Part shown: one piece after another, positions 2 through 21,725 of the stretch
Layout of the letters: each line of letters starts with the position of its first letter
Position numbering within the stretch: position 1 is the first letter of the stretch
IMG/VR virus record: IMGVR_UViG_3300024252_000004
Location: 62,001-126,000 of that record
Strand: one strand, 5' to 3'
Length of the DNA: 64,000 bases
Notes under the pieces: model-generated
Database searches by the model: none
Seen by the model: only the letters and a program-made list of their open reading frames with translations
Told to the model about the DNA's origin: nothing
Made by a program: the position numbers and the translations under genes

Positions 2-157
2 GGATGGAAGTGGACTGACTTTAAGGAAACCTATAACAGGTTGAAATGCAGAGCCAACATGGATGAACGAAATTTGACTCAAGCAGAACATGCAGAAGAG
101 ATGGGCTGGGTAAAAATATATGATGCCGGGCAAAGGCTATACAGGAAGAAATTATGA
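2..157 (+). CDS. 3' end of a phage protein truncated by the window start (...GWKWTDFKETYNRLKCRA...GWVKIYDAGQRLYRKKL*)
   Basis: Open frame from nt 2 to TGA at 155-157, overlapping the next ATG (ATGA). Hand-translated; not in the ORF track. Confidence 0.5.
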   Translation, partial: GWKWTDFKETYNRLKCRANMDERNLTQAEHAEEMGWVKIYDAGQRLYRKKL

Positions 158-1071
158 GCAGACTTAAAATTATGGATTTTTACGTGCATCAGGGTCATCA
201 ATACGAGTTCTTCAAAGGTAAGCATGACTTTTACCTATCAGGCTGCAACTCTCTACCGCCAGATTGGAATGCCGATCATAGGCCCACTCACGAAAACATG
301 ACATTCATTGATGAAAGGGATGCGTTACTCAATCATAATTTTGATGTAATTATGGTTCGTTCGCCATTGAATGCAAAACGATATGAAGCATTTCATAAGA
401 GGGGAGCTACAGGTATTGCGGTAGTTCAGACAACAGATCCTTTTCCGATCCCTGGGTGGGTTCCTTTCGTTGTGTGGAACTCTGAGGACGTAATGCGTCG
501 CTGGAAAGGCAGATTTCCAAAGAAGCAACACTTCTATATTCCTCATGGATTCGATCCAGACGAGTTTCGGGACTTATCTCTTGAGAGGATTGGTCCGGCA
601 TTAAGTGTGTGCAATGCATTCCGACAAAGGGCAGGATTCCTTGGTTATGATCTATGGAAATATCTTAGCAAAAGAAGTAAGTGTAAGATATACGGACATG
701 GTAACGAGAAGATGCGGCTCGACATCAGAGAGTGCGACAATTTTGAAGAGCTAATAAACGTGTATAATACACATAAGCTATACCTGAATACAACTCTTCA
801 CTCTGCAATGCCAAGAGCGAGGGCTGAAGCAATGATGTGCGGCATGCCATTGGTCACAACAGATAATTATGACATTGGAAAATATGTAGAGAATAAAAAG
901 GATTGTATCCTTACAAATGATAGAAACAAGATGCTTAAAGGAATCAATAAACTTCTTAAGTCCGAAGAGATGAGGGCGGAGTATGGTTCGCGTTCCAGAG
1001 AGATTGCGATAAAGCATTTTCATATCGATACTTACTTGGACAGATGGGACGAAGTTTTTAAGAGGGCCTAA
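154..1071 (+). CDS. GT-B glycosyltransferase (GT4-like)
   Basis: IPHGFD and C-terminal SAMPRARAEAMMCGMPLVTT donor-binding-type motif. Confidence 0.75.
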   Translation: MSRLKIMDFYVHQGHQYEFFKGKHDFYLSGCNSLPPDWNADHRPTHENMTFIDERDALLNHNFDVIMVRSPLNAKRYEAFHKRGATGIAVVQTTDPFPIPGWVPFVVWNSEDVMRRWKGRFPKKQHFYIPHGFDPDEFRDLSLERIGPALSVCNAFRQRAGFLGYDLWKYLSKRSKCKIYGHGNEKMRLDIRECDNFEELINVYNTHKLYLNTTLHSAMPRARAEAMMCGMPLVTTDNYDIGKYVENKKDCILTNDRNKMLKGINKLLKSEEMRAEYGSRSREIAIKHFHIDTYLDRWDEVFKRA

Positions 1072-1072
1072 G

Positions 1073-2077
1073 ATGAAGATTCTATATATTGACAATAGGG
1101 TATATGGGCATAACTCAGATCTGCACATAAAGTTTTTTCAGTATATGGAGAAGCGAAAGTATCATTCGATTTATGCCTACGGAGAGCATATGCCTCTCTA
1201 TTTCAAAAGAAGCTACGTACCTAAACGAGACAATGTAGCTAAAGATTTTGATAAGCTTCTTAAGAAAGTTAGACCCGATATCATTTTGACATATAACTGC
1301 AATGGTTCGAGCTACGAGATTGGATTAGATAACGTAGCTCAATTCAAATGGATTGCTCCGACTTTATCAAAGGTAGACATTCCTAAGTTTCATATAACTA
1401 CAGATTATTGTAGGTCTGGGTTCAGGAAAGAACAGGCGAAGTGGTTTGAGGATGTTAATTACACGGCAGCATTCTTCAGGCATAAGGTGGCATTGGATCA
1501 TCCGATTGAGGTGCCTGCATTTTGGTTGCCATTTTCTGTTGACCGAAGACTTTACCAAAGAAATTCTCAGATAAATGTTTCAAGGAAAAAACCAAAGGTA
1601 GGGTTCCTTGGGGCGGCACACAATTCTTCCAAGAAGCTGTATGCGAATAGGATTGCGGCATTTGACATGCTTGAGGAGAAAGATATGCTGGTTACATCCG
1701 CAGTCACCAATCCGATCAAAGGAACTCGAAAGATGTATTTCGGGGAGCAGTATGTTAGATTTTGGACAAGGAATATGTTTGGGCTAACATGTGGTGGAAC
1801 ATGTAATTTTATGACGGCAAAGTATTTTCAGATTCCGGCAGCGTATAGTATGCTCGTGTGCTCTCCGACAGAGGGTTTGGAAATTTTCCCTAAGGACACC
1901 TACATTACTTATGATCGAAAGAATATTGAGCAGTTGCACAAAGATCTTATTTGGCATATCAACAATTACTCAATTACAAAACAGAAGATAAGGACCTTGA
2001 ACAATTATGTCATGTTGAATCATAATCATGACATCAGAATTAAAAGGTTCACAAAAAGGATTAAGAAGCTCATATGA
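1073..2077 (+). CDS. GT-B glycosyltransferase (CgeB/Glyco_trans_1_2-like)
   Basis: WLPFSVD, VGFLG, KYFQIPAAYSMLV, NHNHDIR resemble CgeB-family motifs. Confidence 0.62.
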   Translation: MKILYIDNRVYGHNSDLHIKFFQYMEKRKYHSIYAYGEHMPLYFKRSYVPKRDNVAKDFDKLLKKVRPDIILTYNCNGSSYEIGLDNVAQFKWIAPTLSKVDIPKFHITTDYCRSGFRKEQAKWFEDVNYTAAFFRHKVALDHPIEVPAFWLPFSVDRRLYQRNSQINVSRKKPKVGFLGAAHNSSKKLYANRIAAFDMLEEKDMLVTSAVTNPIKGTRKMYFGEQYVRFWTRNMFGLTCGGTCNFMTAKYFQIPAAYSMLVCSPTEGLEIFPKDTYITYDRKNIEQLHKDLIWHINNYSITKQKIRTLNNYVMLNHNHDIRIKRFTKRIKKLI

Positions 2078-3027
2078 AAATCTTATTTTACTCTTCCCCT
2101 TACCAGTATTATCTGGAGAACTTAACTCCATTGGTCGAGGCAGCAAAGGAACGTGGACACAAAGTCTATACCAGATTTGCATTAAAGGAAGAGAAGAACA
2201 TCCGGAAGCTATTACCTGATGGAGAAGAGACTCATACCATCCACGATCTTATCGAGAAGAGAATGGTGGATGCAGTCGTTCTTGTTCAGCCATGGTGGTA
2301 TGCGGACAAGGAGGTTGCCGGAGCTTGCAACAAATATAATGTTCCATTCTACATAGTAGATCATGCTCCACCTATGATGCCGTACACTGAGGCTTCTGGA
2401 AAAAAGAGTCATCTGTATAGGGCTCGACTTTATAATGCAAGAGCATTCTTTGCTTATGGTGCAGCTACAAAGCAGGTGATGAGAAAAAGGGGCTGCAAGG
2501 AAAAAATTGTAGTCACTGGTTCTCCAAGGGTGGAGGCTATGCTTGAAAGGTATAAGGGTTTTGAGCAGAAGAAGGATTTTAAAGCATTTGTTCTGTATGA
2601 TACATCCCATAGGATGGAAGATAAATCTTTGATTAAAGAGGTCAATAAGCTTCGTAAAGATCTTGGAGCGGATTGGCAGATTTTTATCAAAAGGCATGCT
2701 CGAAGCCCTGATAATTTTAGGAAGATATCAGGAATTGGGTCACTTGAGGGGCCAGAAGAACAGATAGTTTTCTTTGCCGATATGGTGGGATTTACTTTTC
2801 CGTCCTCTGCGATGATTTTGCCAGCCATTGTTGACAAAGATATGGTGGCGCTATATGATAAACATTATTGCACAGAAGCTGTAGGGTATTTCAGAAAGTA
2901 TCAAGAGGCTATTCCGAATAGAAAAGGAAAGAGGGTTAGTACTTACAAAGAATTCATTACAGATAATTATCACACAAGAGGCTCGCCAACTAAAACCATT
3001 TTAGATTACATTGAGGGGAAGACATGA
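2074..3027 (+). CDS. GT-B-fold surface carbohydrate enzyme (glycerophosphotransferase/ulosonate transferase-like)
   Basis: IVVTGSPRVE motif, IKRH, located directly upstream of the neuB/neuA/kds genes. Confidence 0.5.
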   Translation: MKILFYSSPYQYYLENLTPLVEAAKERGHKVYTRFALKEEKNIRKLLPDGEETHTIHDLIEKRMVDAVVLVQPWWYADKEVAGACNKYNVPFYIVDHAPPMMPYTEASGKKSHLYRARLYNARAFFAYGAATKQVMRKRGCKEKIVVTGSPRVEAMLERYKGFEQKKDFKAFVLYDTSHRMEDKSLIKEVNKLRKDLGADWQIFIKRHARSPDNFRKISGIGSLEGPEEQIVFFADMVGFTFPSSAMILPAIVDKDMVALYDKHYCTEAVGYFRKYQEAIPNRKGKRVSTYKEFITDNYHTRGSPTKTILDYIEGKT

Positions 3028-3347
3028 AGATAGCATTCGATTTAGACCATACAGTTTTAACACAGGGATCACCCGATAACAATTACGCAGACTCAGCAGT
3101 CAAACCAGGCATGGTAGAGTTTGTGAATTCTTTTCATGATAAGGGTCACGAGATTTACTTCTTCACTGCAAGGCATTTTAAGCACCATGTATATACTGAC
3201 GAATTCCTACGAGCAGCAGGGTTCAAATTTCATGGGCTATACCTCAACAAGATTTCAGTACATCTCTTTGTGGATGACAGGGGTTTCCGTTGGGAAGATG
3301 GCAAAGAGCAGGAGCTTGTAGAACTAGTGGAGAGTATGGATGAGTGA
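3024..3347 (+). CDS. Small HAD-family phosphatase (capsule-biosynthesis phosphatase type)
   Basis: MKIAFDLDHTV (DxDxT), FFTAR, FVDDRG motifs. Confidence 0.72.
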   Translation: MKIAFDLDHTVLTQGSPDNNYADSAVKPGMVEFVNSFHDKGHEIYFFTARHFKHHVYTDEFLRAAGFKFHGLYLNKISVHLFVDDRGFRWEDGKEQELVELVESMDE

Positions 3348-3540
3348 ATCAGTCACATACATCAAGGCGCAGTGTTGCAATGAAGATTGTTATGCGATTG
3401 ATAATGAGGAGCCATGCTGGGGAGATACACAAGCCATCGATGAAGAATATTACGGTGATGACGATTACTATTGGGTCCATGCTTGCGAAGGTCATCAGGA
3501 CAAATATCATGGCGGAGACTACATAGAGGAGGAGCAATGA
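3340..3540 (+). CDS. Small acidic Cys/His-rich hypothetical protein
   Basis: 66-aa ORF overlapping both neighbours; CCNEDC, CWG, HACEGH. Confidence 0.5.
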   Translation: MSESVTYIKAQCCNEDCYAIDNEEPCWGDTQAIDEEYYGDDDYYWVHACEGHQDKYHGGDYIEEEQ

Positions 3541-4379
3541 GAGTTATTGCAGAGGTCGGATGCAACCATAAAGGTGACATTGAAATTGCGAAAGAGCACA
3601 TGCGTATTGCGAAAGAAGTCTGTAATGCTGACGTTGTCAAGTTTCAGAAGAGAACGAACCGAGAACTACTCTCCGAAGAGGAATTTGACGCGCCTCATCC
3701 TGTTCCATATAATTCTTATGGAGCTACCTATGGCGAGCATAGAGAGTTTTTAGAGTTCAGCATGGATCAGCATATGGAGCTTATGAGATATGCGGAAGAG
3801 TTGGGGATTGATTATTCTGCATCAGTGTGGGATATGACATCCACGAAACAATTGGTTAAGTTAAACCCCAGTCTTATCAAGATACCATCGCCAAGAAATA
3901 CTCAGTATGAAATGCTCGAATACTTGGTCAAGAATTATGCAGGGGAGATTCATCTTTCGCTTGGCATGACAACTCGCAAAGAGGAGGTTCGTATAATGAA
4001 AGTGCTGGACCCTGTTCGTGAAAGAGTCGTGTTGTACGCCTGCACTTCAGGTTATCCGGTAGACTTCAAGGATGTATGTCTTTATGAAGTTAAAAGATTA
4101 AAGGAGACATGGGGCAATGCAGTTTTGGGAATTGGTTTTTCTGGTCATCATCTTGGAATCGCCGTCGATATGGGCGCAATTACACTTGGCGCAACAGTAT
4201 TGGAAAGGCACTTCACTCTCGATAGAACGTGGAAGGGAACTGATCACGCTGCTTCGTTGGAGCCTGATGGGTTACGGCGATTAGTCCGAGACTCTAAAGC
4301 AATGACGCAAGCACTGACTTATAAGAATCAGCAGATTCTTGAGGTAGAGCAGGTGCAAAGGGATAAGTTTAAAAAATGA
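3537..4379 (+). CDS. neuB: Nonulosonic acid (NeuB/Kdn-9-P type) synthase, short form without C-terminal SAF domain
   Basis: IAEVGCNHKGD, VKFQKR, ACTSGYP, GFSGH, LERHFTLDR; start moved to ATG 3537 behind GGAGGAG. Confidence 0.9.
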   Translation: MRVIAEVGCNHKGDIEIAKEHMRIAKEVCNADVVKFQKRTNRELLSEEEFDAPHPVPYNSYGATYGEHREFLEFSMDQHMELMRYAEELGIDYSASVWDMTSTKQLVKLNPSLIKIPSPRNTQYEMLEYLVKNYAGEIHLSLGMTTRKEEVRIMKVLDPVRERVVLYACTSGYPVDFKDVCLYEVKRLKETWGNAVLGIGFSGHHLGIAVDMGAITLGATVLERHFTLDRTWKGTDHAASLEPDGLRRLVRDSKAMTQALTYKNQQILEVEQVQRDKFKK

Positions 4380-5053
4380 AAACAGTAGCGGTTTTATTAG
4401 CCAGAGGTGGGAGCAAAGAGATTCCAAGGAAAAATTTGATCGATGTGTGCGGTCAGCCTTTAATTTCTTATGGTATCGGTGCGGCTGTATTTGCCGGACT
4501 TGAGACATGGGTGAGTACCGACGATGAAGAAATTGCTGCGGTTTCCAAAGAGTGGGGAGCTAAAGTATTGATGCGACCAGCGGAGTTGGCAACAGATACC
4601 TCTCAGTCAGAGGACGCTTTGCTACACTTTGCTGAAAATGTTGAGTTCGATAGGTTGGTGTTCATTCAGCCAACCTCGCCGCTCCTGAAGCTACGCCACA
4701 TTAAAGAGGGCCTTAGATTAATGGAACAATATGATTCTGTATTCTCAGGGAATATAGATCACTGGACTCCCAAGTGGGGAGATGTAAATTATCGGAAAAA
4801 TTCAGCTATAGAGAAAAGACTTCTTCCAATCAGTTGGAAATTAGATAATCGACCAAGAAGGCAAGATGCTGCTGGCGGTGTTTATACAGAGAATGGAGCT
4901 TTTTACATTACTTCTAAAGAAAGATTGATGGAGTCAGAGTGCCGTTACTCAGGCAATATCGGTTGTTATGAGATGCTACAGTCGGAAAGTTTCCAAGTGG
5001 ACTCCTATGACGATCTAAGAATAATCGAAGCTATATTGGGAAGATCCAGATAA
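4376..5053 (+). CDS. neuA: Acylneuraminate/nonulosonate cytidylyltransferase
   Basis: ARGGSKEIPRKN, VSTDD, QPTSP, ENGAFY, QVDSYDD. Confidence 0.88.
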   Translation: MKTVAVLLARGGSKEIPRKNLIDVCGQPLISYGIGAAVFAGLETWVSTDDEEIAAVSKEWGAKVLMRPAELATDTSQSEDALLHFAENVEFDRLVFIQPTSPLLKLRHIKEGLRLMEQYDSVFSGNIDHWTPKWGDVNYRKNSAIEKRLLPISWKLDNRPRRQDAAGGVYTENGAFYITSKERLMESECRYSGNIGCYEMLQSESFQVDSYDDLRIIEAILGRSR

Positions 5054-5067: not shown

Positions 5068-5847
5068 GTGAGTAATTTAACATTGATAGCCGGCCCTTGT
5101 GCTGTAGAGAATGAGGAGACTCCATTCCTTGTGGCAAATACTGTAAAGGAAATTTGCGACAGACTTGGTGGAATCGACTTTATCTTTAAGGCTTCTTGGA
5201 AGAAGGCCAACCGAACACGATTGGATTCCTTCACGGGAATTGACAGACAGGATGCTCTTGATATTCTCAAGAGAGTGCGTGATGAACTTGGACTTCCAGT
5301 TATCACAGATATCCACGAGAGTCATGAGGCTGCATTGGTTGCGGACTACGTAACTCATTTGCAGATACCAGCTTTCTTATGCAGGCAGACAGATTTGCTT
5401 ATGGCAGCAGGAGCTACAGGGTTGCCGGTTGGGGTCAAGAAAGGACAATTTGTTTCTCCGGAAATGATGCAACATGCTGTGACTAAGATTAAGGCCGGTG
5501 GTGGATCAGACGTATTCCTTATGGAGAGAGGCACAACTTTCGGTTATAAGAATCTTGTAGTTGACTTTACCTCCTTACCAAAGATGAGAGAGTACGCTCC
5601 TGTATTTTTGGACTGTACTCATTGCCTGCAAGAGCCGAACCAAGCTCATGGAGTTACTGGTGGCAATCCTGCAATGATTGGGCATATGGTTAATGCGGCT
5701 GTTGCGGTTGGTGTAGATGGCTTATTTATCGAGACTCACCCAGACCCTGCTTCGGCAGGAAGTGACTCAGCAACGCAGTTGCAGCTTGACCAGCTTGAGA
5801 GAATTCTTGAGAGGGCAATGAGAGTTAGAGAAGCGGCGAGTTCATAA
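5068..5847 (+). CDS. kdsA: KDO-8-phosphate synthase
   Basis: IAGPCAVE, KASWKKANRT, QIPAFLCRQTDL, KKGQF, ERGTTFGY, ETHPDP. Confidence 0.95.
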   Translation: MSNLTLIAGPCAVENEETPFLVANTVKEICDRLGGIDFIFKASWKKANRTRLDSFTGIDRQDALDILKRVRDELGLPVITDIHESHEAALVADYVTHLQIPAFLCRQTDLLMAAGATGLPVGVKKGQFVSPEMMQHAVTKIKAGGGSDVFLMERGTTFGYKNLVVDFTSLPKMREYAPVFLDCTHCLQEPNQAHGVTGGNPAMIGHMVNAAVAVGVDGLFIETHPDPASAGSDSATQLQLDQLERILERAMRVREAASS

Positions 5848-8849: not shown

Positions 8850-8850
8850 A

Positions 8851-12314: not shown

Positions 12315-12349
12315 GTTAATTCTCCGTCAGTCTCACGTTAATTCTCCGT
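12306..12349. repeat. Perfect 22-bp tandem duplication (CAGTCTCACGTTAATTCTCCGT x2) covering the RBS and start of the minus-strand gene
   Basis: Read directly at 12306-12327 and 12328-12349. Confidence 0.9.
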
Positions 12350-12352
12350 CGC

Positions 12353-12360
12353 TACTATTA
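12353..12360 (+). promoter_or_regulatory. Candidate phage promoter motif TACTATTA
   Basis: 32 nt upstream of ATG 12393 in a divergent intergenic region; a TATAAATA is also present at 12369-12376. Confidence 0.4.
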
Positions 12361-12392
12361 TACTTTTATATAAATATAAGGAAGCCTACCTA

Positions 12393-13148: not shown

Positions 13149-13149
13149 A

Positions 13150-15467: not shown

Positions 15468-16252
15468 TAGGTTATCCTATGGTATTTAGTTAAAAAGTCT
15501 ATAGCTTCACCGTTTGACAGTTCGTCAACAGTGAATTGGTTACAGAATAAGTTTTTCAACCAAAGCTCTCTATCAGGATAGCAAAGGCTCTCTATGTCTG
15601 AGAGGTCTGTCCTGGCAACAAATTTGCTTGCGGCATCTCCAAGGACGATTGCTGGAACCCCACTAAAGATAGCCTCAGTTGCTGCATTGCTATTATACAC
15701 AACGATGCAGTGAGCATCTTCAAGTGCAGCTAACAATGATGTATCTCCATGATACCTTGCGATTTTATTATCAGGCTTGTACCTTATGATCACTTCTCTA
15801 TCGGAGTTTTTATCAAGATATTTAACAACTCTATTTAGCCATTTATCTTTATCAAATTTATAGAACTCGCTGGTCTTTTTACTTGGAGGACACACCACAA
15901 TTTTAGAGCCCCCTTTTCTCCATGGCTCGGGAGTTACAGGTGAGACGTTTCTCCATCCTTTAATATCTCTCATCTCATTCATCTGAAGGGAGTTGTAGGA
16001 TACACGTATCCAAAATTTTCTTTCCCCAAAAATATAAGCCCTGTCGAGAAAGAAGTATGGAATGCCAAGCTCTTCAAATTTTGATATAAGTTTAAGTCTT
16101 CCAAGTCCCGTAACTACGGCAGTATAACCAGAGCTTTTGATTGCTCTTAAATCCTGTTCGTATAAGTTCATAAGCGGAGCCTTAGCTCCGAACGAGAAAT
16201 GACTTGAGAATTTTTTGTCATCATGGCATATAATCTTCATTCGTTCACCCAT
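15467..16252 (-). CDS. KpsS-like GT-B protein, paralogue 6 (inverted; tandem duplicate of paralogue 5; start may be 16240)
   Basis: MKIICHDD vs MKLICHDD, FLDRAY, VYNSNAATEAIFSGVP, LFCNQF. Confidence 0.6.
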   Translation of the reverse strand: MGERMKIICHDDKKFSSHFSFGAKAPLMNLYEQDLRAIKSSGYTAVVTGLGRLKLISKFEELGIPYFFLDRAYIFGERKFWIRVSYNSLQMNEMRDIKGWRNVSPVTPEPWRKGGSKIVVCPPSKKTSEFYKFDKDKWLNRVVKYLDKNSDREVIIRYKPDNKIARYHGDTSLLAALEDAHCIVVYNSNAATEAIFSGVPAIVLGDAASKFVARTDLSDIESLCYPDRELWLKNLFCNQFTVDELSNGEAIDFLTKYHRIT

Positions 16253-16266
16253 ACTAATTATTTCGA

Positions 16267-16274
16267 TATTAATA
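16267..16274. promoter_or_regulatory. Palindromic TATTAATA in a divergent intergenic region (candidate bidirectional promoter)
   Basis: 24 nt from + start 16299 and 26 nt from - start 16240. Confidence 0.35.
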
Positions 16275-16298
16275 TGAGATGTAACATAGCTGAAGGAA

Positions 16299-16916
16299 AT
16301 GAGGCGGCAATTGATAATCAGTCATAAATATAAATTGATTTTCGTTAAGACTAAAAAAACATCAGGTTCTACTCTGGAGTTTCTGTTGTCAAGCAGGCTT
16401 GGGCCGAAAGATATCTGCACCGGTTCCGAACGTGATGGGACATCGAAAGTTAATACAAACATATCTAACGGGCACATGAATCTGTCAAAGATTAAGAAGA
16501 TTTTTCCAAAGGAATTCGAGAACTACTATAAATTTTCAATAGAACGAAATCCTTGGGACAAAGTTGTTAGTTCATATTTTTGGCATAACAAAGTGAAACC
16601 AGAGAAGTATGCTGGTATGGATTTCACAAAGTACATGATAGCAGCTAAGGGGCTTCCGGTCGGTTGGAAAATATACACTATTGGTGGAGAGATAGCAGCA
16701 GATAAAGTTTTTTTTTATGAAAACTTAAATGAAATGTATAATGAGCTTAATAGGCAATTTGATTTACAGATAACTCCCGAAGAAATCCGAGACACCAGAA
16801 AGAAATCTGGTATCAGAAAAGTTGGACATTATTCTGAGCTGCACAACGAAGAAACAATAGAAATAGTTAAAAAGCGCTTTGCAGATGAAATCAAAGCTTT
16901 CAGCTATACTTACTGA
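16299..16916 (+). CDS. Sulfotransferase family 2 protein
   Basis: IFVKTKKTSGST (5'-PSB loop), ERNPWDKVVSSY (3'-PB). Confidence 0.8.
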   Translation: MRRQLIISHKYKLIFVKTKKTSGSTLEFLLSSRLGPKDICTGSERDGTSKVNTNISNGHMNLSKIKKIFPKEFENYYKFSIERNPWDKVVSSYFWHNKVKPEKYAGMDFTKYMIAAKGLPVGWKIYTIGGEIAADKVFFYENLNEMYNELNRQFDLQITPEEIRDTRKKSGIRKVGHYSELHNEETIEIVKKRFADEIKAFSYTY

Positions 16917-16924
16917 GGAAATAT

Positions 16925-17560
16925 ATGAAACATGTTGGCGGACACGAAGGCAAAACTTGGATAGATTATGGTGCCTTAAAAGCTTTGGTAGATAGATTTC
17001 AAAATGCCAAAACATTTATTGATATAGGTTGCGGTCCAGGCAAACAGGTTGAGGTGGCGAAGGCTTTGGGGCTATCTGCTATTGGGGTCGATGGAGATCC
17101 TGAGATGACAAAGTTGAAGCATGTTAATCTTTTTGATTTTTCTAAGAAAAAAGCAGCTAAAGATGATCTGCCATTTCTTCCGAAAAGAAAATATTTCGAC
17201 ATTGGGTGGTCAACAGAATTTCTCGAACATATTGATGAGAAATACATTGAGAATTTTATGCCATTATTTGCTTTGTGCAAAGTTGTGGTCATAACTCATG
17301 CAACTCCGGGTCAAAAAGGGCATCATCATGTCAATGAACAATTATTTCCTTATTGGAAAGATATATTTCATAGTTATGGCTTAAATGAAGATAAAGAACT
17401 CACAAAGCTTCTTCGGATTAAATCAACAATGAAACAGAAAAAGATTAACCACTTTGTAAAGTATAAGAAAGACGGTACACCAAAGGTTAAAAGGATCAAG
17501 TCATCCTTCATGGTAAAATCAGGAAGAGTATTTATAAACACAAAGTTAAAGGAGCTATGA
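16925..17560 (+). CDS. Class I SAM methyltransferase
   Basis: IDIGCGPG, GVDG, STEFLEHI, HATPGQKGHHHVNEQ. Confidence 0.75.
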   Translation: MKHVGGHEGKTWIDYGALKALVDRFQNAKTFIDIGCGPGKQVEVAKALGLSAIGVDGDPEMTKLKHVNLFDFSKKKAAKDDLPFLPKRKYFDIGWSTEFLEHIDEKYIENFMPLFALCKVVVITHATPGQKGHHHVNEQLFPYWKDIFHSYGLNEDKELTKLLRIKSTMKQKKINHFVKYKKDGTPKVKRIKSSFMVKSGRVFINTKLKEL

Positions 17561-18531
17561 TGCTTAGAGCAGTTGTAACAGGTGCCGGCCAGGACTCGTC
17601 CTATTTGGCAGACCTTCTTCTTGAGAAGGGATATGAAGTTTTGGTGTTTACTCGCCGTCGTTCTGTTAATAATGAGAACGAAAATCTTAAACATATTATC
17701 GATCATCCTAACCTAACGGTGATGCATGGAGACATTACAGACCCAACTTTCGTCGGAAGAATTCTGCACGATTTCAAACCGCATGAGTATTACGGTCTTG
17801 CGGCACAGTCCCATGTAGGATACTCCTTTAAAGATCCTGTTCATACATTTGACGTAACAGGTAGGGCAGTTGTTATGCAGCTTGATCTCATTAGAGAGTT
17901 CAGCCCCGCAACCCGTTTCTATAATGCTGCTACCTCTGAACTGTTCGGTGGCCTTCATGTTCCTGATACGGGTTATACAGAGGAGTCTCCGTTCTATCCA
18001 CGCTCACCATATGCAGTGGCAAAGGCCGCAGGATTCTATGCCACAAGGAATTATAGAGAGGCGTACGGTCTGTTTGCCTGTTCAGGAATTCTATTCAATC
18101 ATTCCTCGCCAAGAAGAGGGCATGATTTTGCCACAAGAAAGATGACCCGAGGTATCGCAAAGGTGAAGCTTGGAATGGAAGAGCATTTGAGGATGGGCAA
18201 CCTTGAGCCGTATAGAGATGAGGGTCATGCAAAAGATTATGTCAAGGCTCAGTGGCTTATGTTGCAGCAGGAAGAGCCAGATGATTTCGTAATTGCCACT
18301 GGTTATGGGGCAAGCATAGAGGATATGTTTAAGTATATATGTGACCTTGCAGGTTTGAAATTTGAGGATGTATACAGATCAGACCCCAGATTCATGAGGC
18401 CATCGGATGTTCCGTTCCTTAGAGGCGATCCTTCAAAGGCAAAGACCGTTCTTGGATGGGAGCCTGAGTACGATTGGCAGAAACTTCTTAAGGAAATGTA
18501 TGAAGCGGATTTGGCCGAGTTAGATGTTTAA
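17557..18531 (+). CDS. gmd: GDP-mannose 4,6-dehydratase
   Basis: GQDSSYLA, AAQSHV, ATSELFG, PRSPYAVAK, GILFNHSSPRRG, FATRK. Confidence 0.95.
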   Translation: MMLRAVVTGAGQDSSYLADLLLEKGYEVLVFTRRRSVNNENENLKHIIDHPNLTVMHGDITDPTFVGRILHDFKPHEYYGLAAQSHVGYSFKDPVHTFDVTGRAVVMQLDLIREFSPATRFYNAATSELFGGLHVPDTGYTEESPFYPRSPYAVAKAAGFYATRNYREAYGLFACSGILFNHSSPRRGHDFATRKMTRGIAKVKLGMEEHLRMGNLEPYRDEGHAKDYVKAQWLMLQQEEPDDFVIATGYGASIEDMFKYICDLAGLKFEDVYRSDPRFMRPSDVPFLRGDPSKAKTVLGWEPEYDWQKLLKEMYEADLAELDV

Positions 18532-19162
18532 GAAGCTTTTAAAACGAAACGATTTTGATTATTGTATAGTAGGAAATTCGCCATGCGAAGTTGGCCAGAA
18601 AAATGGTGAGAAGATTGATTCTCACAAGTTAATCTTCAGGTTCAATGATTTCTCGTTGGACCAAGGTTTTCAGGAGGATTATGGCTCCAAGGTAAATATA
18701 TGGATCCGAGGAACTAACGATAAACTGGTTTACACAATGGAACAGAAGAAGGAATTATTAGAAGATTTAGATCTCATTATCCTTCGCGCCAAAGATGATA
18801 GAAATAAGAAGTTTAGAGACTACTGCAAGACTAACGGTATAAAATATTACGTGCTTCCGCTTGAAAATGAGCTGGAGCTTACGAAGGACCTTGGGCGATG
18901 CCCAAGCACAGGTCTTCTTTTGCTCTATAGCATCAAGAAGGTTACGGGTGGCTTGGACCGAAGCAGAGTTTATGGATTTTCTTTTTGCAGAGAGAATAGA
19001 AGCAAAAGAAAAACCGGTGGTCAGATTCATTACTACAACAAAGATGATCTTGTAAATCCTGTTACCGGAAAGGTAGAGAGCATTAAGAATACTTTCCTCA
19101 TCTCAAAGCATGATTGGGGGAGGGAAGAAATATATTTTAGGAACAAGATACTGAGAGGTTGA
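18524..19162 (+). CDS. GT29-family sialyltransferase-like protein
   Basis: Sialylmotif L (CIVGNS...IDSHKLIFRFN...EDYGSK), S (PSTGLLLL...VYGF), HYY and VS-like HDWGRE. Confidence 0.8.
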   Translation: MFKKLLKRNDFDYCIVGNSPCEVGQKNGEKIDSHKLIFRFNDFSLDQGFQEDYGSKVNIWIRGTNDKLVYTMEQKKELLEDLDLIILRAKDDRNKKFRDYCKTNGIKYYVLPLENELELTKDLGRCPSTGLLLLYSIKKVTGGLDRSRVYGFSFCRENRSKRKTGGQIHYYNKDDLVNPVTGKVESIKNTFLISKHDWGREEIYFRNKILRG

Positions 19163-19163
19163 A

Positions 19164-20015
19164 ATGAGTGAAGAAGCTGAAACAAAAGAAGAGTTTGTGC
19201 CTGTAAAGATCGGTGTCATTGGGATGGGATTTGTTGGAGGATCCGTTTTTGAATTTTTTTCGAAAGCAGGAGAACTTATGTATTCCTATGATAAGAAAGA
19301 ACTCTGGACTATACCAGGAGGCGAAGGGGAATTTGCAAGTAACAAATTTGAGGATTTAATTCCTACAGACTTTGTATTTATATGTCTGCCTACACCTTAC
19401 ATTGAAGGGTTCGGCTTTGACTATACAGCGCTGCATGAGAATTTCCTGAAGTTGGCACAAGCAAAGTACCAGGGAATCGTCGTCGTCAAAAGCACCATGG
19501 AGCCAGGAACTTTGAGAGCTTTAGCTGATAAGTATAAGTTAGCAATGGTTCATAACCCGGAATTTCTTACTGCAAGAACTGCGGTTGAAGATTTTGCCAA
19601 CCAGAAGCATGTAGTCGTTGGAGGCTTTGAGTTCTCCGTATGCCAAAAGGTTGTAGCTCTATATCAGAGACATTTCGAGGCACAGTATACGATTTGTGAT
19701 GCTGAACAAGCAGAGTTGATGAAGCTATTCTGTAACAACTTCTATGCAGTAAAGGTTCAATTGTTCAATGAGTTTGCTTTGACCTGCAAAAGAATGGGCG
19801 TTAAATATGAAGATGTGAGAAGCACTATGCTTAGAAACGGCTGGATTAATCCTATGCACACTGATGTGCCGGGACCAGACGGGCAATTTAGTTATGGAGG
19901 GGCATGTTTCCCCAAGGACACCAATGCTTTGCGAGACTTTATGAAACGTCACGGCGTTCCTTGCGAAGTTCTTGAGGCATGTATTAGTGAACGAAATAAG
20001 ATGAGGAAAGATTAA
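19164..20015 (+). CDS. ugd: UDP-glucose/GDP-mannose dehydrogenase family protein (short form)
   Basis: IGMGFVG, CLPTP, KST, NPEFL, GGACFPKD. Confidence 0.85.
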   Translation: MSEEAETKEEFVPVKIGVIGMGFVGGSVFEFFSKAGELMYSYDKKELWTIPGGEGEFASNKFEDLIPTDFVFICLPTPYIEGFGFDYTALHENFLKLAQAKYQGIVVVKSTMEPGTLRALADKYKLAMVHNPEFLTARTAVEDFANQKHVVVGGFEFSVCQKVVALYQRHFEAQYTICDAEQAELMKLFCNNFYAVKVQLFNEFALTCKRMGVKYEDVRSTMLRNGWINPMHTDVPGPDGQFSYGGACFPKDTNALRDFMKRHGVPCEVLEACISERNKMRKD

Positions 20016-20017
20016 AT

Positions 20018-20995
20018 ATGAATTATGAATACACAAGAGCCCTGGTAACAGGGGGAGCCGGATTTATAGGAAGTCACCTTGTTGACAGATTGTTAAGCGA
20101 TGGCTTAGAGGTTTGTGTAGTTGACAACTATAATTCTGGAGATAAAGAAAACATTAAAGATCACTTCAAGAACTCAAACTGTATGATAGAAAATCAGGGT
20201 ATTGAAGGAGAAGGGTTACATGATATTTTCAGAGTGTTTAGACCGGAGATGGTATTTCATCTTGCAGCTATCCCTGGGGTATATCAGTCAGTGCTTGAGC
20301 CGGCGAAGACAGCCGAGGTAAATCTTGTTGGCACTGCCAATGTTCTTGCTATGGCAGAAAAATTTGAGACAAAGAGAGTGTTATTCGCCTCTTCGTCTTC
20401 TGTTTATGGCGGTAAAGCAGAAATGCCAACAAGCGAAGCGTCTCTGCTTATGCCTAAGTCACCATATGCTTTGCAGAAGTATATTGGTGAAGAATATTGC
20501 AGGTATTACTCAAAGAATACATCAGTTGATACAGTAGCTCTAAGGCTATTCAATGTCTTTGGGCCCAGACAGAAAGGCAACTCGGCATACTCTGCTGTTA
20601 TCGCAGCATTTTTAGAAGCAAAGAAGAAGGGCTTTAGCGCCAATGTATATGGTGATGGAGAACAGACCAGAGACTTCTGTTATGTGGATAATGTTGTGGA
20701 GGCATTTATTCAGGCAAGCCAGCATAACTCACGATTCAATGGCGAAGGGTTCAATATAGCTTTCGGAGAAAGGACTTCGGTTAATGATCTTTTAGATATG
20801 ATTGGAGTCGAAGAGTACGATACTTATGACGATAGGCCGGGAGATGTAAAGGATTCTTGGGCATCTTTCGATAAGGCAAAATCTTGGTTCGGCTACAGTC
20901 CAAAAGTTTCTGTGCTACGTGGATTAGAGCTAACTGCACAGTGGTATTTGGGGGATGCATATGAGGTCGGAAAGAAGAAATCTAAAAGAGATTAG
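20018..20995 (+). CDS. NAD-dependent nucleotide-sugar epimerase/dehydratase
   Basis: TGGAGFIGSHL, HLAA, SSSSVYG, YALQK (YxxxK), NVFGP, RDFCYV. Confidence 0.9.
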   Translation: MNYEYTRALVTGGAGFIGSHLVDRLLSDGLEVCVVDNYNSGDKENIKDHFKNSNCMIENQGIEGEGLHDIFRVFRPEMVFHLAAIPGVYQSVLEPAKTAEVNLVGTANVLAMAEKFETKRVLFASSSSVYGGKAEMPTSEASLLMPKSPYALQKYIGEEYCRYYSKNTSVDTVALRLFNVFGPRQKGNSAYSAVIAAFLEAKKKGFSANVYGDGEQTRDFCYVDNVVEAFIQASQHNSRFNGEGFNIAFGERTSVNDLLDMIGVEEYDTYDDRPGDVKDSWASFDKAKSWFGYSPKVSVLRGLELTAQWYLGDAYEVGKKKSKRD

Positions 20996-21725
20996 GTTAA
21001 CTGCCATGATGCGCTCTGGTCATCATGGAATAATCAATTGGCTGATACCTCACTTTGAGGGATATGTTCTTCACAGAAATGACATTATGGAATTTGCAGC
21101 AAGAAGCAAACCTACTATTGATGAGGAATGGGGTATGCCGGACGAGATCCGGTCTTGCTACATTATCAATTTCGAAGAGCTATTGCCGTCACAAGTTTCC
21201 ACCCTTTATAAGCGATACAAAAATAGACTGATGGACGGGCATAGCGAAGAGGTTTTTAATGGACATGTAATACGTGATCCTTTTAATATGTTTGCGAGCC
21301 GCCGTAAATTATCTATAAAGCTTGAAAGAGAAAATCGAAACACCAACCGAGTTGGAAAGGTAGGATGGATCGATGACAAAGCGCTATCTTTGTGGAAAGA
21401 GTATGCCAAAGGTTATCTGAATCCAGAGCCAAATGATATTTGGATCAATTTTAATGAATGGTATCTAAGTAAGGAATACAGACGTTCTGTATCTGAGGCT
21501 TTTGGTATCGATTTTACAGACGTAGGTTTGAATATAGTTTCAAGTCATGGTTATGGTAGCTCTTTTGAGGGCACAAGTTATGATAAGCAAGCACAGTTCA
21601 TGCCAGTGTTAGAACGGTATAAAACAATGACAAGAGATTCGATTTATATGGATGCAATGAAGGATCCTGAAATTAGAGATCTTTACTCCCAAATCTGGGG
21701 AGAAATTCCAAAGGAGTTAAGATGA
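20955..21725 (+). CDS. Sulfotransferase-like protein
   Basis: MRSGHHGIINW, RDPFNMFASR, LWKEYA, FNEW, GYGSSF. Confidence 0.6.
   Translation: MHMRSERRNLKEIRLTAMMRSGHHGIINWLIPHFEGYVLHRNDIMEFAARSKPTIDEEWGMPDEIRSCYIINFEELLPSQVSTLYKRYKNRLMDGHSEEVFNGHVIRDPFNMFASRRKLSIKLERENRNTNRVGKVGWIDDKALSLWKEYAKGYLNPEPNDIWINFNEWYLSKEYRRSVSEAFGIDFTDVGLNIVSSHGYGSSFEGTSYDKQAQFMPVLERYKTMTRDSIYMDAMKDPEIRDLYSQIWGEIPKELR

What the first reader, a model, noticed from the sequence alone, without database searches (positions are those of the whole stretch)
154..21725. ~21.5-kb viral glycan factory with both CMP-Kdo and CMP-nonulosonate pathways
Seen: kdsA, kdsB, kdsD, neuB, neuA, HAD phosphatase, gmd, ugd, an epimerase, a dozen or more GT-like genes, two sulfotransferase-like genes and three methyltransferases, plus three more GTs at 30304-32907. 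Known: making both activated ulosonic acids is typical of cellular capsule/LPS loci. Inference: the phage builds a complex acidic, sulfated and methylated glycan, either on the virion or to remodel the host surface. No flippase or polymerase is recognisable in the window, which fits cytoplasmic virion glycosylation better.
Basis: partly seen in the sequence, partly recalled or inferred. Interest (0 to 1): 0.72.

Follow-up and report, generated by a model that had tools for sequence, protein, structure and literature searches.

The report
Jumbo-phage Kdo and sialic-type glycan island
A roughly 400-kb marine phage carries a 27-kb block of soluble enzymes that make activated Kdo and a sialic-acid-like sugar, with matching transferases, so the phage probably builds its own acidic sugar coat, though what it coats is unknown.

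Summary
The gene list is real. The window lies in a 395-kb IMG/VR phage record that also holds baseplate, tail-fibre and terminase genes, 44 tRNAs and a tmRNA.

- **Kdo route:** KdsA and KdsB pass NCBIfam equivalog cut-offs. KdsD is a SIS-only form, and a 107-aa HAD stands in for KdsC.
- **Nonulosonate route:** only the last two steps are encoded, a NeuB-family synthase without the SAF domain and a CMP-sialate-type synthetase. The genome has no NeuC and no DegT aminotransferase.
- **Matching transferases (new here):** five Pfam-less paralogs plus one divergent member are related by profile and fold to retaining beta-Kdo transferases (KpsC, WbbB, KrkA). A 212-aa protein is a compact GT29-type sialyltransferase with all four sialylmotifs.
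- **Corrections:** 'ugd' lacks its whole C-terminal domain. The island starts 5 kb before the window with three more GT4 genes, right after baseplate and giant fibre-like genes. A relative at about 55% amino-acid identity keeps this order.
- **No membrane machinery:** no priming transferase, flippase, polymerase, ligase or ABC-2 permease was found in the genome, and no island protein has a membrane segment.

Stepwise cytoplasmic assembly is therefore likely. The acceptor, virion or host lipid-linked glycan, remains inferred. This is a new variant of known virus-encoded glycosylation clusters.

The parts
154..1071 (+). GT4-like GT-B glycosyltransferase
   Evidence: Pfam Glyco_trans_1_2 and Glycos_transf_1, E 9e-11 and 2.5e-9
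1073..2077 (+). GT-B-like glycosyltransferase from a phage-specific family
   Evidence: No Pfam match. Atlas feature score 0.98 to viral clusters that carry Glyco_trans_1_2. 58% identical homologue in relative G001.
2074..3027 (+). Unassigned GT-B-like protein, distantly related to the beta-Kdo-transferase-like family
   Evidence: 33 homologues, many on contigs of 100-420 kb, none with a Pfam domain. hhalign against A2: probability 82%, E 1e-5. Against UDP-GlcNAc 2-epimerases: probability 41%. No match among solved structures.
3024..3347 (+). Minimal HAD-type phosphatase, candidate Kdo-8-P (and possibly NulO-9-P) phosphatase
   Evidence: Weak HAD matches. DLDHT, T, K and DD motifs read directly from the sequence. 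It sits next to KdsA in L006, where no NeuB was found within 10 kb.
3340..3540 (+). 66-aa Cys-rich ORF of unknown role
   Evidence: Read from the sequence. No equivalent lies between HAD and NeuB in G001.
3537..4379 (+). NeuB-family nonulosonate synthase without a SAF domain
   Evidence: Pfam NeuB E 3e-64. TIGR03569 183 bits, below its cut-off of 399. Best solved relative is N. meningitidis NeuB at 86 bits, ahead of PseI at 69.
4376..5053 (+). CMP-nonulosonate synthetase (NeuA-like)
   Evidence: CTP_transf_3. Full-length matches to CMP-Neu5Ac synthetases, E 4e-30 to 6e-21, stronger than to KdsB at E 7.5e-10.
5068..5847 (+). KdsA, Kdo-8-phosphate synthase
   Evidence: NF003543 332 bits (cut-off 242) and TIGR01362 315.3 bits (cut-off 314). 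The nearest cellular homologues listed, 51-60% identical, are nearly all named Bacteroidota.
5847..6647 (+). KdsB, CMP-Kdo synthetase
   Evidence: NF003952 277 bits (cut-off 193) and TIGR00466 224.6 bits (cut-off 155.2)
6704..7288 (+). KdsD-like arabinose-5-P isomerase, SIS domain only
   Evidence: SIS E 4e-21. KpsF/GutQ TIGR00393 172.5 bits covering model positions 1-152 of 268.
7285..8091 (+). GT-A (GT8-like) glycosyltransferase
   Evidence: Atlas score 0.98 to viral 'nucleotide-diphospho-sugar transferase' clusters, some carrying Glyco_transf_8
8088..8849 (+). FkbM-type methyltransferase
   Evidence: PF05050 E 2.5e-18
8851..9789 (+). Beta-Kdo-transferase-like paralog 1: HP motif kept, QxxxD motif not
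   Evidence: blastp paralogy; A2 HMM E 1.3e-51; motifs
9793..10401 (+). Methyltransf_24 / TylF-like O-methyltransferase
   Evidence: PF13578 E 2e-10
10398..11297 (+). Beta-Kdo-transferase-like paralog 2, the only one with both GQxxxD and HP motifs
   Evidence: A2 HMM E 3e-90; motifs
11280..12314 (-). Beta-Kdo-transferase-like paralog 3, the one that was modelled
   Evidence: AF2 mean pLDDT 94. The 12 best Foldseek matches are KpsC, KrkA and WbbB, E 7e-9 to 1e-5.
12393..13148 (+). Weak GT8-like GT-A
   Evidence: PF01501 E 1e-4, 22.4 bits against a cut-off of 24.3. Homologue in G001.
13150..13920 (+). DUF6492-like protein, possibly GT-A-like; weak assignment
   Evidence: PF20102 E 4.5e-4; weak GT34 and GT2_4 matches
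13917..14729 (+). Divergent sixth member of the beta-Kdo-transferase-like family
   Evidence: A2 HMM E 4.6e-6, C-terminal motif region only
14694..15467 (-). Beta-Kdo-transferase-like paralog 4: lacks the His of the HP motif and lacks QxxxD
   Evidence: 51% identical to paralog 5; motifs
15467..16252 (-). Beta-Kdo-transferase-like paralog 5: lacks the His of the HP motif and lacks QxxxD
16299..16916 (+). Sulfotransferase (Sulfotransfer_2 family)
   Evidence: PF03567 E 2.5e-7, 31.5 bits against a cut-off of 22
16925..17560 (+). Class I SAM methyltransferase
   Evidence: PF13489 and PF08241
17557..18531 (+). GDP-mannose 4,6-dehydratase
   Evidence: PF16363 E 3e-99. TIGR01472 333 bits, below its cut-off of 415.
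18524..19162 (+). Compact GT29-type sialyltransferase, 212 aa, no membrane anchor
   Evidence: PF00777 37.6 bits against a cut-off of 23. Sialylmotifs L, S, III and VS conserved across 27 homologues. AF2 mean pLDDT 81. The 25 best Foldseek matches are mammalian GT29 enzymes.
19164..20015 (+). Truncated UDP-glucose/GDP-mannose dehydrogenase homologue: N-terminal and central domains with the catalytic Cys motif, no C-terminal domain
   Evidence: PF03720 was not found anywhere in the genome. The same short form, 278 aa, occurs in G001.
20018..20995 (+). SDR nucleotide-sugar 4-epimerase
   Evidence: PF01370 E 1e-60. Best solved relatives are UDP-hexose, UDP-HexNAc and UDP-GlcA 4-epimerases.
20955..21725 (+). 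Protein with a sulfotransferase fold
   Evidence: No Pfam match. Atlas structure TM 0.66-0.69 to Sulfotransfer_1/3 clusters.
30304..32907 (+). Satellite trio of GT4, GT2 and GT4
   Evidence: Pfam. These, together with the island, account for all GT1 and GT2 Pfam matches in the 395-kb genome.

Best explanation
This is a phage-encoded glycan-synthesis island of about 27 kb (genome 56,989-83,725, which is window -5,011 to 21,725), plus a three-GT satellite at window 30,304-32,907. It lies in a marine jumbo phage of about 395-415 kb whose host is probably a member of the Bacteroidota.

Shown at family level:
1. A full route from ribulose-5-P to CMP-Kdo: a SIS-only KdsD, KdsA, a minimal HAD phosphatase in place of KdsC, and KdsB.
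2. The last two steps of a nonulosonate route: a SAF-less NeuB-family synthase and a CMP-sialate-type synthetase.
3. Transferases that fit both CMP donors: six members of a family related to retaining beta-Kdo transferases (GT99/GT107), and a compact GT29-type sialyltransferase.
4. GMD, a truncated UGD homologue, a 4-epimerase, about eight further GT-A or GT-B enzymes, three methyltransferases and two sulfotransferase-like proteins.

Inferred:
- All these proteins are soluble, and the phage encodes no lipid-carrier priming enzyme, flippase, polymerase, ligase or exporter. The glycan is therefore assembled sugar by sugar in the infected cell's cytoplasm, using host-made hexose precursors, CTP, PEP, SAM and PAPS.
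- The most likely acceptor is phage virion protein (baseplate or fibre proteins, or capsid decoration), giving particles an acidic, partly methylated or sulfated coat.
- The low-GC middle of the island is a swappable cassette that differs between relatives, as in O-antigen loci or the clade-specific clusters of giant viruses.

My confidence is about 0.85 in the biosynthetic capacity and about 0.45 that the virion is the acceptor. The single figure reported is for the whole statement.
For: - Phage identity: a 395-kb IMG/VR record that CheckV rates 100% complete; PHROG matches to DnaB, RNR, PhoH and tail fibre; a gp6-like baseplate wedge, E 5e-36; TerL; 44 tRNAs and a tmRNA. The same DNA is held in at least 20 seawater metagenome runs and in an independent 236-kb contig at about 100% identity.
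- Kdo and NulO enzymes.
- Beta-Kdo-transferase relatives: five paralogs by blastp. The 85-sequence profile matches only KpsC and WbbB among solved structures, E 4.8e-4 and 3e-3. The model has mean pLDDT 94, and its 12 best fold matches are KpsC, KrkA and WbbB. A sixth member was found with the same profile.
- GT29.
- Soluble enzymes and no export machinery: no membrane segments in island proteins and no protein with seven or more such segments in the genome. No Polysacc_synt, WaaA, Capsule_synth, Bac_transf, ABC2_membrane or Wzy_C.
- All GT1 and GT2 Pfam matches in the genome lie in the 57-95 kb region.
- Position: the island follows the gp6-like baseplate gene, a 3218-aa protein with a LamG/ConA-like domain and a 1516-aa protein. 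Relative G001 keeps this order at about 40-75% identity per protein.
- Cassette behaviour: G001 has eight other genes (DegT, SDR, GT10-like, PhyH and others) between KdsA and KdsB, and no sulfotransferase homologue was seen there. Window 8088-17560 has 36.8% GC against 43.8% for the genome.
Against: - No chemistry, expression data or virion data exist. No RNA run was listed.
- All solved relatives of the beta-Kdo-transferase-like family act on lipid-linked glycans (lyso-PG-linked capsule linker, Und-PP-linked O-antigen). This favours a host envelope acceptor.
- Only one of the five clear paralogs keeps both the GQxxxD and HP motifs, and two lack both, so some may not transfer Kdo at all.
- NeuB lacks the SAF domain and scores below the equivalog cut-offs. 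Its substrate is unknown, and no precursor pathway is encoded.
- The UGD homologue lacks its UDP-sugar-binding domain.
- The giant proteins upstream have no PHROG match of their own. That they are fibres is inferred from their size, the LamG domain and the neighbouring baseplate gene.
- Lying next to structural genes is weak evidence about the acceptor.
Confidence: 0.5

Rival explanations
1. Host-surface remodelling. The soluble phage enzymes extend host lipid-linked intermediates (lipid A-core, Und-PP-linked O-antigen, or a lyso-PG/Kdo capsule linker) at the inner face of the membrane, and the host's own flippases or ABC transporters export the altered LPS or capsule. The likely benefit would be superinfection exclusion or protection of the infected cell during a long latent period.
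For: - The closest solved relatives of the six-member family (KpsC, WbbB, KrkA) all work on lipid-linked glycans.
- Published readings of kdsA, kdsB and LPS genes in marine phages favour modification of the host cell surface (PMC12801897; PMC5332604).
- The nearest cellular KdsA homologues are from Bacteroidota, which fits a host-derived envelope pathway.
Against: - The whole genome shows no priming transferase, flippase, polymerase, ligase, ABC-2 permease or WaaA.
- No island protein has a membrane segment.
- The GT29-like family and the beta-Kdo-transferase-like family are almost unseen in 301-401 sampled Bacteroidota genomes, so these are not simply borrowed host envelope genes.
- The island sits next to baseplate and fibre genes in two diverged relatives.
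Confidence: 0.3
2. DNA hypermodification. Some of the transferases attach Kdo or other sugars to modified bases in phage DNA to block host nucleases, as shown for other phage gene clusters.
For: - Phage GT-B enzymes can put Kdo-like and uronic sugars on 5hmC (bioRxiv 10.1101/2023.12.21.572611).
- A dCMP deaminase, a nucleoside hydrolase and a DNA methyltransferase lie downstream in the window.
Against: - No Tet_JBP and no thymidylate-synthase-like hydroxymethylase was found in the genome. The Tet_JBP search had no positive control, so that absence is weak.
- More than 20 transferases plus methyl- and sulfotransferases is far more than a base modification needs.
- No T4-type DNA glucosyltransferase signal was seen.
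Confidence: 0.05
3. Not a viral feature. The block is host chromosome joined to phage DNA by misassembly, or host DNA flanking a prophage.
For: - IMG/VR labels relative G001 a 'provirus'.
- The Kdo genes look bacterial.
Against: - The island is internal, about 57-84 kb into a 395-kb record, with phage genes on both sides.
- It is found at about 100% identity in an independent contig, and in the same order in a relative at about 55% identity.
- At least 20 seawater runs hold it.
- Many island proteins belong to clusters that are 80-100% viral.
Confidence: 0.02

Closest known systems
38-kb carbohydrate cluster of Cafeteria roenbergensis virus (CroV), and Fadolivirus (predicted Kdo pathway in giant viruses; Chem Rev 2022, PMC9614988)
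   Same: A virus-encoded, bacterial-like route to CMP-Kdo sits in one island with several glycosyltransferases, a UDP-glucose dehydrogenase and sugar methyltransferases. In both cases the product and the acceptor have not been validated.
   Different: Here the virus is a tailed phage of bacteria. The enzymes are single-domain rather than fused and bifunctional. A separate NeuB and NeuA pair, a GT29-type transferase, a six-member beta-Kdo-transferase-like family and sulfotransferases are also present.
Marine phages annotated with kdsA, kdsB, neuA, gmd and glycosyltransferase genes: cyanomyovirus S-SCSM2R (PMC12801897) and an environmental viral genome of Nishimura et al. 2017 (PMC5332604)
   Same: These are tailed marine phages carrying KdsA with or without KdsB, NDP-sugar enzymes and many glycosyltransferases (13 in S-SCSM2R). 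The genes are read there as cell-wall or LPS genes.
   Different: Those reports stop at annotation and list no dedicated Kdo or sialyl transferases. Here there are about 20 GT-like genes, both CMP-ulosonate synthetases, matching transferase families, and a genome-wide lack of export genes. KdsA occurs in at least 38 IMG/VR loci, but only 4 of the 38 hold the beta-Kdo-transferase-like family within 10 kb.
Retaining beta-Kdo transferases KpsC/KpsS (GT107), WbbB (GT99) and KrkA
   Same: Same GT-B-derived fold. The HP motif and the S-x-x-G-x-E-A-type motif align, and one paralog keeps GQxxxD.
   Different: Sequence identity is about 10-15%. There is no Pfam Capsule_synth match in this genome. Four of the five clear paralogs lack the nucleophile motif. 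The proteins are single-domain, 257-344 aa, with no sign of a membrane or lipid-binding part.
Eukaryotic GT29 sialyltransferases (ST8Sia, ST6GalNAc, ST6Gal, ST3Gal)
   Same: Pfam GT29 score above the gathering cut-off, sialylmotifs L, S, III and VS present, and the best fold matches are GT29 enzymes.
   Different: Only 212 aa, with no signal anchor or stem region. It is cytoplasmic and phage-borne. The family was seen only on metagenomic contigs of up to 420 kb, several from marine surveys such as Tara, and was essentially not found in 401 sampled Bacteroidota genomes.
Virion glycosylation of mycobacteriophages (Freeman et al. 2023; cited in PMC12619734) and the clade-specific glycosylation clusters of Mimivirus (PMC9614988)
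   Same: Virus-encoded soluble transferases lie near structural genes, and the sugar cassettes differ between lineages.
   Different: Those systems have experimental proof of glycans on capsid, tail or fibrils. There is none here. The sugars differ too: ulosonic acids and possible sulfate.

Membership tests
Bacterial CMP-Kdo pathway (KdsD-KdsA-KdsC-KdsB) | Kdo-8-P synthase scoring above the equivalog cut-off | tested here: met
   NF003543 332 bits (cut-off 242); TIGR01362 315.3 bits (cut-off 314)
Bacterial CMP-Kdo pathway (KdsD-KdsA-KdsC-KdsB) | CMP-Kdo synthetase scoring above the equivalog cut-off | tested here: met
   TIGR00466 224.6 bits (cut-off 155.2); NF003952 277 bits (cut-off 193)
Bacterial CMP-Kdo pathway (KdsD-KdsA-KdsC-KdsB) | Arabinose-5-P isomerase with a SIS domain plus a CBS pair | tested here: inconclusive
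   The SIS domain matches KdsD and KpsF strongly (E about 1e-50), but the protein ends at model position 152 of 268 and scores below the cut-offs. That SIS-only isomerases exist is my recollection; it was not tested here.
Bacterial CMP-Kdo pathway (KdsD-KdsA-KdsC-KdsB) | KdsC-type Kdo-8-P phosphatase | tested here: not met
   No KdsC model matched. Only a 107-aa HAD with weak Cof, LNS2 and acid-phosphatase matches is present. Its role is inferred from its position next to KdsA in three relatives.
NeuB / sialic acid synthase | NeuB TIM-barrel domain | tested here: met
   PF03102 E 3e-64
NeuB / sialic acid synthase | C-terminal SAF (antifreeze-like) domain and an equivalog-level score | tested here: not met
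   280 aa. The match stops at model position 274 of 329, with 183 bits against a cut-off of 399.65. The G001 homologue is also short, 285 aa.
Complete Neu5Ac, legionaminic or pseudaminic acid pathway | Enzymes that make the precursor (NeuC or LegG 2-epimerase; DegT aminotransferase) | tested here: not met
   PF02350 and PF01041 were not found in the 395-kb record, with positive controls. ORF 2074-3027 matches epimerases at only 41% hhalign probability.
GT29 sialyltransferases | Pfam GT29 score above the gathering cut-off, and sialylmotifs L, S, III and VS | tested here: met
   37.6 bits against a cut-off of 23. The motifs are invariant across 27 homologues. The motif definitions are from my own knowledge.
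GT29 sialyltransferases | GT-A variant 2 fold of the sialyltransferases | tested here: met
   The 25 best Foldseek matches are all mammalian GT29 enzymes, E 4e-6 to 2e-3, TM about 0.5, followed by GT42 CstII. The model has mean pLDDT 81.
GT29 sialyltransferases | Type II membrane topology with a stem region | tested here: not met
   212 aa with no hydrophobic segment
Retaining beta-Kdo transferases (GT99/GT107) | Characteristic fold, closest to KpsC, WbbB and KrkA | tested here: met
   Foldseek ranks 1-12. The profile matches only KpsC and WbbB among solved structures.
Retaining beta-Kdo transferases (GT99/GT107) | Catalytic Asp motif (QxxxD-type) and the HP motif | tested here: inconclusive
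   Both motifs are present in 10398-11297. Only HP is present in 8851-9789 and 11280-12314. Neither is present in 14694-15467 or 15467-16252.
Retaining beta-Kdo transferases (GT99/GT107) | Pfam Capsule_synth (PF05159) match | tested here: not met
   No match in the genome even at E up to 10. Only 6 of the 85 wider family members match it.
Wzx/Wzy- or ABC-transporter-dependent polysaccharide locus | Priming phosphoglycosyltransferase, flippase, polymerase or ligase, or ABC-2 permease | tested here: not met
   PF02397, PF01943, PF04932 and PF01061 were not found, with positive controls. No polytopic membrane protein of the needed size is present. PF00953 (the WecA type) was not searched.
Phage DNA sugar-hypermodification clusters | An enzyme that makes 5-hydroxymethylpyrimidine (TET/JBP or ThyA-like) | tested here: not met
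   PF12851 and PF00303 were not found. The PF12851 search had no positive control.
Carbohydrate sulfotransferases | Family match and a source of PAPS | tested here: inconclusive
   PF03567 scores above its cut-off for 16299-16916. For 20955-21725 there is fold evidence only. No APS kinase is encoded, so the donor must come from the host. The PAPS-binding motifs were not examined.
Virion glycosylation systems (mycobacteriophage or giant-virus type) | Glycan shown on virion proteins | not testable with these tools
   Only position next to baseplate and fibre genes is available.

The most novel reading that the evidence does not exclude
The phage coats its own baseplate fibres or capsid with a Kdo- and sialic-type, methylated and sulfated glycan made entirely by phage enzymes. 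These include phage-specific lineages of beta-Kdo transferases and of GT29-type sialyltransferases, a family otherwise thought of as eukaryotic. The coat would work in infection, either as bait for the glycan-capture systems of polysaccharide-feeding Bacteroidota or as a shield. Marine jumbo phages would then be a large unrecognised reservoir of ulosonic-acid glycobiology and of compact, soluble sialyltransferases.
Probability: 0.12. Interest if true: 0.85.

Novelty: new variant of a known kind. Interest (0 to 1): 0.62.

Why it matters
Virus-encoded glycosylation has been proven for chloroviruses, mimiviruses and some mycobacteriophages. For marine phages, 'LPS genes' have been noted only as annotations.

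This island pairs both CMP-ulosonate donors with dedicated transferase families and has no export machinery. That makes a concrete, testable case that a tailed phage builds an acidic glycan in the cytoplasm.

It also exposes two enzyme families of wider interest:
- A very large, mostly metagenomic family related to retaining beta-Kdo transferases: 4,971 representative clusters at E up to 0.001.
- A compact, soluble GT29-type sialyltransferase found on contigs of up to 420 kb. It could matter for the origin of eukaryotic sialyltransferases and as a small biocatalyst.

Tried and rejected
- Megablast of window 1-22000 against GenBank phages: no match.
- PHROG scans of the giant upstream proteins (3218, 1516, 2033, 1596, 1444, 1188 and 1069 aa): no useful match. 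Their fibre nature is therefore inferred.
- NeuC hypothesis for ORF 2074-3027: Pfam Epimerase_2 E 0.018, but hhalign against six Bacteroidota epimerases gives only 41% probability, compared with 82% against the beta-Kdo-transferase-like family. The idea is rejected as unsupported. The profile of this family finds nothing among solved structures.
- A direct Pfam Capsule_synth search of the genome: nothing. The relationship appeared only with an 85-sequence profile and with the fold.
- RNA runs holding KdsA and KdsB: none was listed, so expression is untested. Read laying was not used, because independent contigs already show that the island is contiguous with phage DNA.
- Ser/Thr-richness scan for obvious O-glycosylation targets: the giant proteins are only mildly enriched, 0.14-0.20 against a genome mean of 0.125, which is not decisive.
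- Co-occurrence of KdsA with the beta-Kdo-transferase-like family in other viral loci: only 4 of 38 within 10 kb, so the pairing is not general.
- Complex prediction was not used, because no specific protein pair is claimed to bind.
- No alternative genetic code was needed. All island ORFs are open under table 11.

Full report
**Where the window lies.** The window is bases 62,001-126,000 of a single 395,127-bp IMG/VR virus record that CheckV rates 100% complete.

The record is a tailed phage:
- PHROG matches in the window include a DnaB-like helicase, the ribonucleotide reductase large subunit, PhoH and a tail fibre protein.
- Upstream there is a gp6-like baseplate wedge protein (E 5e-36) and a virion structural protein.
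- A large terminase lies at the far end of the record.
- The genome has 44 tRNAs and a tmRNA.
- Genes run almost entirely on one strand.

The same DNA is held near-identically by at least 20 seawater metagenome runs. An independent 236-kb contig carries it at about 100% identity. Proteins identical to those of the island occur on a contig of 414,644 bp, so the true genome may be somewhat larger than this record.

**The observation.**
- KdsA and KdsB pass NCBIfam equivalog cut-offs.
- KdsD is a 194-aa SIS-only form without the CBS pair.
- The HAD is a 107-aa minimal protein with all four HAD motifs readable in the sequence.
- NeuB most likely starts at the ATG at 3537 (MRVIAEVGCNH...), giving 280 aa, and has no SAF domain.
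- The NeuA-like protein matches CMP-Neu5Ac synthetases over its full length (E 4e-30) and much better than it matches KdsB.
- GMD, a 4-epimerase-type SDR, three methyltransferases and one Pfam-level sulfotransferase are clear.
- The second 'sulfotransferase' (20955-21725) has no Pfam match, but its Atlas model aligns with sulfotransferase clusters at TM 0.66-0.69.
- The 'ugd' keeps the catalytic GGxCxPKD motif but ends where the UDP-sugar-binding C-terminal domain should begin. That domain is found nowhere in the genome. A relative has the same short form, so the truncation is conserved and is not an assembly error.

**New finding 1: transferases that match the donors.**

Ten ORFs in the interval had no Pfam match. 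Five of them are paralogs of each other (alignment A1): 8851-9789, 10398-11297, 11280-12314(-), 14694-15467(-) and 15467-16252(-).
- A profile search of 1.84 billion representative proteins found 4,971 related clusters at E up to 0.001.
- A profile built from 85 of these matches only KpsC and WbbB among all solved structures, E 4.8e-4 and 3e-3. The alignment falls on the HP motif and the Ser-x-x-Gly-x-Glu-Ala motif.
- A minority of the family members touch Pfam DUF6716 or Capsule_synth.
- An AlphaFold model of 11280-12314 has mean pLDDT 94. Its 12 best Foldseek matches are all retaining beta-Kdo transferases: KpsC, KrkA and WbbB.
- The same profile detects a sixth, divergent member at 13917-14729 (E 4.6e-6).
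- ORF 2074-3027 is a more distant relative (hhalign probability 82%).
- Caveat: only 10398-11297 keeps both GQxxxD and HP. Two paralogs keep HP only, and the 51%-identical pair on the minus strand keeps neither. Some members may therefore use another donor or another mechanism.

ORF 18524-19162 scores above the Pfam GT29 cut-off.
- Its 27 homologues are all about 212 aa. They come from metagenomes, including Tara, on contigs of up to 420 kb.
- They conserve what I recognise as sialylmotifs L, S, III and VS.
- The model has mean pLDDT 81. Its 25 best fold matches are all mammalian GT29 sialyltransferases, followed by GT42 CstII.
- The family is essentially not found in 401 sampled Bacteroidota genomes, with three marginal partial matches. 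The beta-Kdo-transferase-like family gives only 4 weak partial matches in 301.

So the phage carries donor-synthesis genes and cognate transferase families for both ulosonic acids, and these families are not ordinary genes of the presumed host.

**New finding 2: extent and setting of the island.**
- The island begins before the window. Three GT4 genes lie at genome 56,989-60,766, then a 464-aa HTH/DUF7487 ORF, then the window's first GT4.
- Directly upstream lie, in order, a gp6-like baseplate wedge protein, a 3,218-aa protein with a LamG/ConA-like domain, and a 1,516-aa protein.
- All Pfam GT1 and GT2 matches in the 395-kb genome fall between 57 and 95 kb.
- A 332-kb relative, G001 (99% complete; proteins 40-75% identical), has the same order: giant proteins, three GT4, GT4, a LAGLIDADG ORF, the 1073- and 2074-type genes, HAD, NeuB, NeuA, KdsA. 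Eight genes absent from this phage follow: FkbM, DegT aminotransferase, SDR, GT10-like, a DegT fragment, PhyH and two unknowns. After them come KdsB, KdsD, a GT-A, five beta-Kdo-transferase-like paralogs with methyltransferases, GMD, GT29, the short UGD, the epimerase and a GT4.
- No sulfotransferase homologue was seen in G001.
- In this phage the middle segment (window 8,088-17,560) has 36.8% GC against 43.8% for the genome. It contains 4 of the 10 lowest-GC 2-kb windows of the genome.
- The island is thus a conserved frame with swappable cassettes, like O-antigen loci and the clade-specific clusters of mimiviruses (PMC9614988).

**New finding 3: what is missing.**

Searches of the whole record, each with positive controls in reference genomes, did not find:
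- NeuC-type 2-epimerase, DegT aminotransferase, sugar-1-P nucleotidyltransferase or APS kinase;
- Wzx-type flippase, WaaA, Capsule_synth, Bac_transf priming enzyme, ABC-2 permease or Wzy/ligase.

A hydropathy scan finds no membrane segment in any island protein and no polytopic protein of flippase or polymerase size in the genome. The nonulosonate route is therefore only its last two steps, and the hexose precursor, PAPS and GDP-mannose must come from the host.

The HAD lies next to KdsA in a third relative (L006) where no NeuB was found within 10 kb. I therefore read it primarily as the Kdo-8-P phosphatase. That it also serves a phosphorylated NeuB product, as in a Kdn-9-P-type route, is speculation.

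**Mechanism.**
- Shown: family-level capacity for CMP-Kdo and for a CMP-nonulosonate, candidate transferases for both, further GT-A and GT-B enzymes, and O-methyl and sulfo decorating enzymes, all of them soluble.
- Inferred: stepwise cytoplasmic assembly on an acceptor.
- I favour virion proteins as the acceptor, at about 0.45. The reasons are that no part of a lipid-linked export pathway is encoded, that the island is fixed next to baseplate and fibre genes in two diverged genomes, and that the key transferase families are phage-associated rather than host-like.
- The main rival, at about 0.3, is extension of host lipid-linked glycans that host machinery then exports. It is supported by the fact that all solved beta-Kdo transferase relatives act on such acceptors, and by the usual reading of phage LPS genes (PMC12801897, PMC5332604).
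- DNA glycosylation (bioRxiv 10.1101/2023.12.21.572611) is unlikely. No hydroxymethylpyrimidine-forming enzyme was found, and the enzyme set is far larger than a base modification needs.

**Host.** The best 80 cellular KdsA relatives kept by the search (51-60% identical) are nearly all named as Bacteroidota, among them Flavobacteriales, Cytophagales-type lineages and Saprospiraceae. This is a hint at a marine Bacteroidota host, not proof.

**Comparison and novelty.**
- The closest described systems are the unvalidated Kdo clusters of the giant viruses CroV and Fadolivirus, and marine phages annotated with kdsA, kdsB, neuA and up to 13 glycosyltransferases.
- Proven virion glycosylation exists for mycobacteriophages and giant viruses.
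- In the searched literature I found no phage report that combines both CMP-ulosonate synthetases with a GT29-type enzyme and a beta-Kdo-transferase-like family. The library is incomplete, so this is not proof of priority.
- I rate the finding a new variant of a known kind, with interest 0.62. It is solid and richer than first described, but it is still genomic inference with an unknown product and acceptor.

Noticed in passing
window 32843-34342 (+): TubZ/PhuZ-like tubulin (Pfam Tubulin and TubZ-like_C), lying just after the satellite GT trio.
   Followed up: no
window 44524-51036 (+): A PrkA/YeaG-type 'serine kinase' AAA protein, 36% identical to proteins of Thermus phages and matching huge uncultured phage records. 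It is followed by a protein matching a PHROG family labelled 'sporulation protein' and by an 857-aa protein with an endonuclease-like insert. The three look like a stress-kinase operon carried by the phage.
   Followed up: partly
window 51807-54989 (+): The ribonucleotide reductase large subunit (1060 aa) has an endonuclease-like stretch at about residues 441-562. This suggests an intein or homing-endonuclease insertion.
   Followed up: no
genome 302460-302537 (outside the window) and genome-wide: The genome has 44 tRNAs and one tmRNA. One tRNA has a CTA anticodon and could be an amber suppressor. All island ORFs are open under table 11, so no recoding was assumed.
   Followed up: no
window -1237 to 157 (L001:263-1657); relative L004:5276-6139: A 464-aa HTH/DUF7487 ORF interrupts the run of GT genes. 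Relative G001 has a LAGLIDADG-domain ORF nearby. Both look like selfish mobile genes inside the island.
   Followed up: partly
window 19164-20015 (+): The UDP-glucose dehydrogenase homologue lacks its whole C-terminal UDP-sugar-binding domain but keeps the catalytic Cys motif. The short form is conserved in a relative at 48% identity. Its function is unclear.
   Followed up: partly
window 8088-17560: A low-GC island, 36.8% against 43.8% for the genome. It coincides with the part of the cluster that differs between relatives.
   Followed up: yes
window 3340-3540 (+): A 66-aa Cys- and acid-rich ORF sits between HAD and NeuB, overlapping both by a few bases. No equivalent lies there in relative G001.
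   Followed up: no
window 22769-28508 (+): A nucleotide-metabolism block lies just after the island: a dCMP deaminase, a UvrD-type helicase with a 43%-identical paralog at genome 170894-172552, and an inosine-uridine nucleoside hydrolase.
   Followed up: no
relative record G001 (loci L004, L122, L123): IMG/VR labels this 332-kb relative, rated 99% complete, a 'provirus'. Its layout matches the phage studied here. The label may be a side effect of the bacterial-looking sugar genes.
   Followed up: no
loci L020, L025, L026 (contigs of 23-35 kb): Small viral contigs carry KdsA, a cytidylyltransferase, a GT-A of the 7285 type, an FkbM methyltransferase and 3-4 beta-Kdo-transferase-like paralogs. 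A smaller version of the Kdo module therefore circulates in other marine viral contigs.
   Followed up: partly
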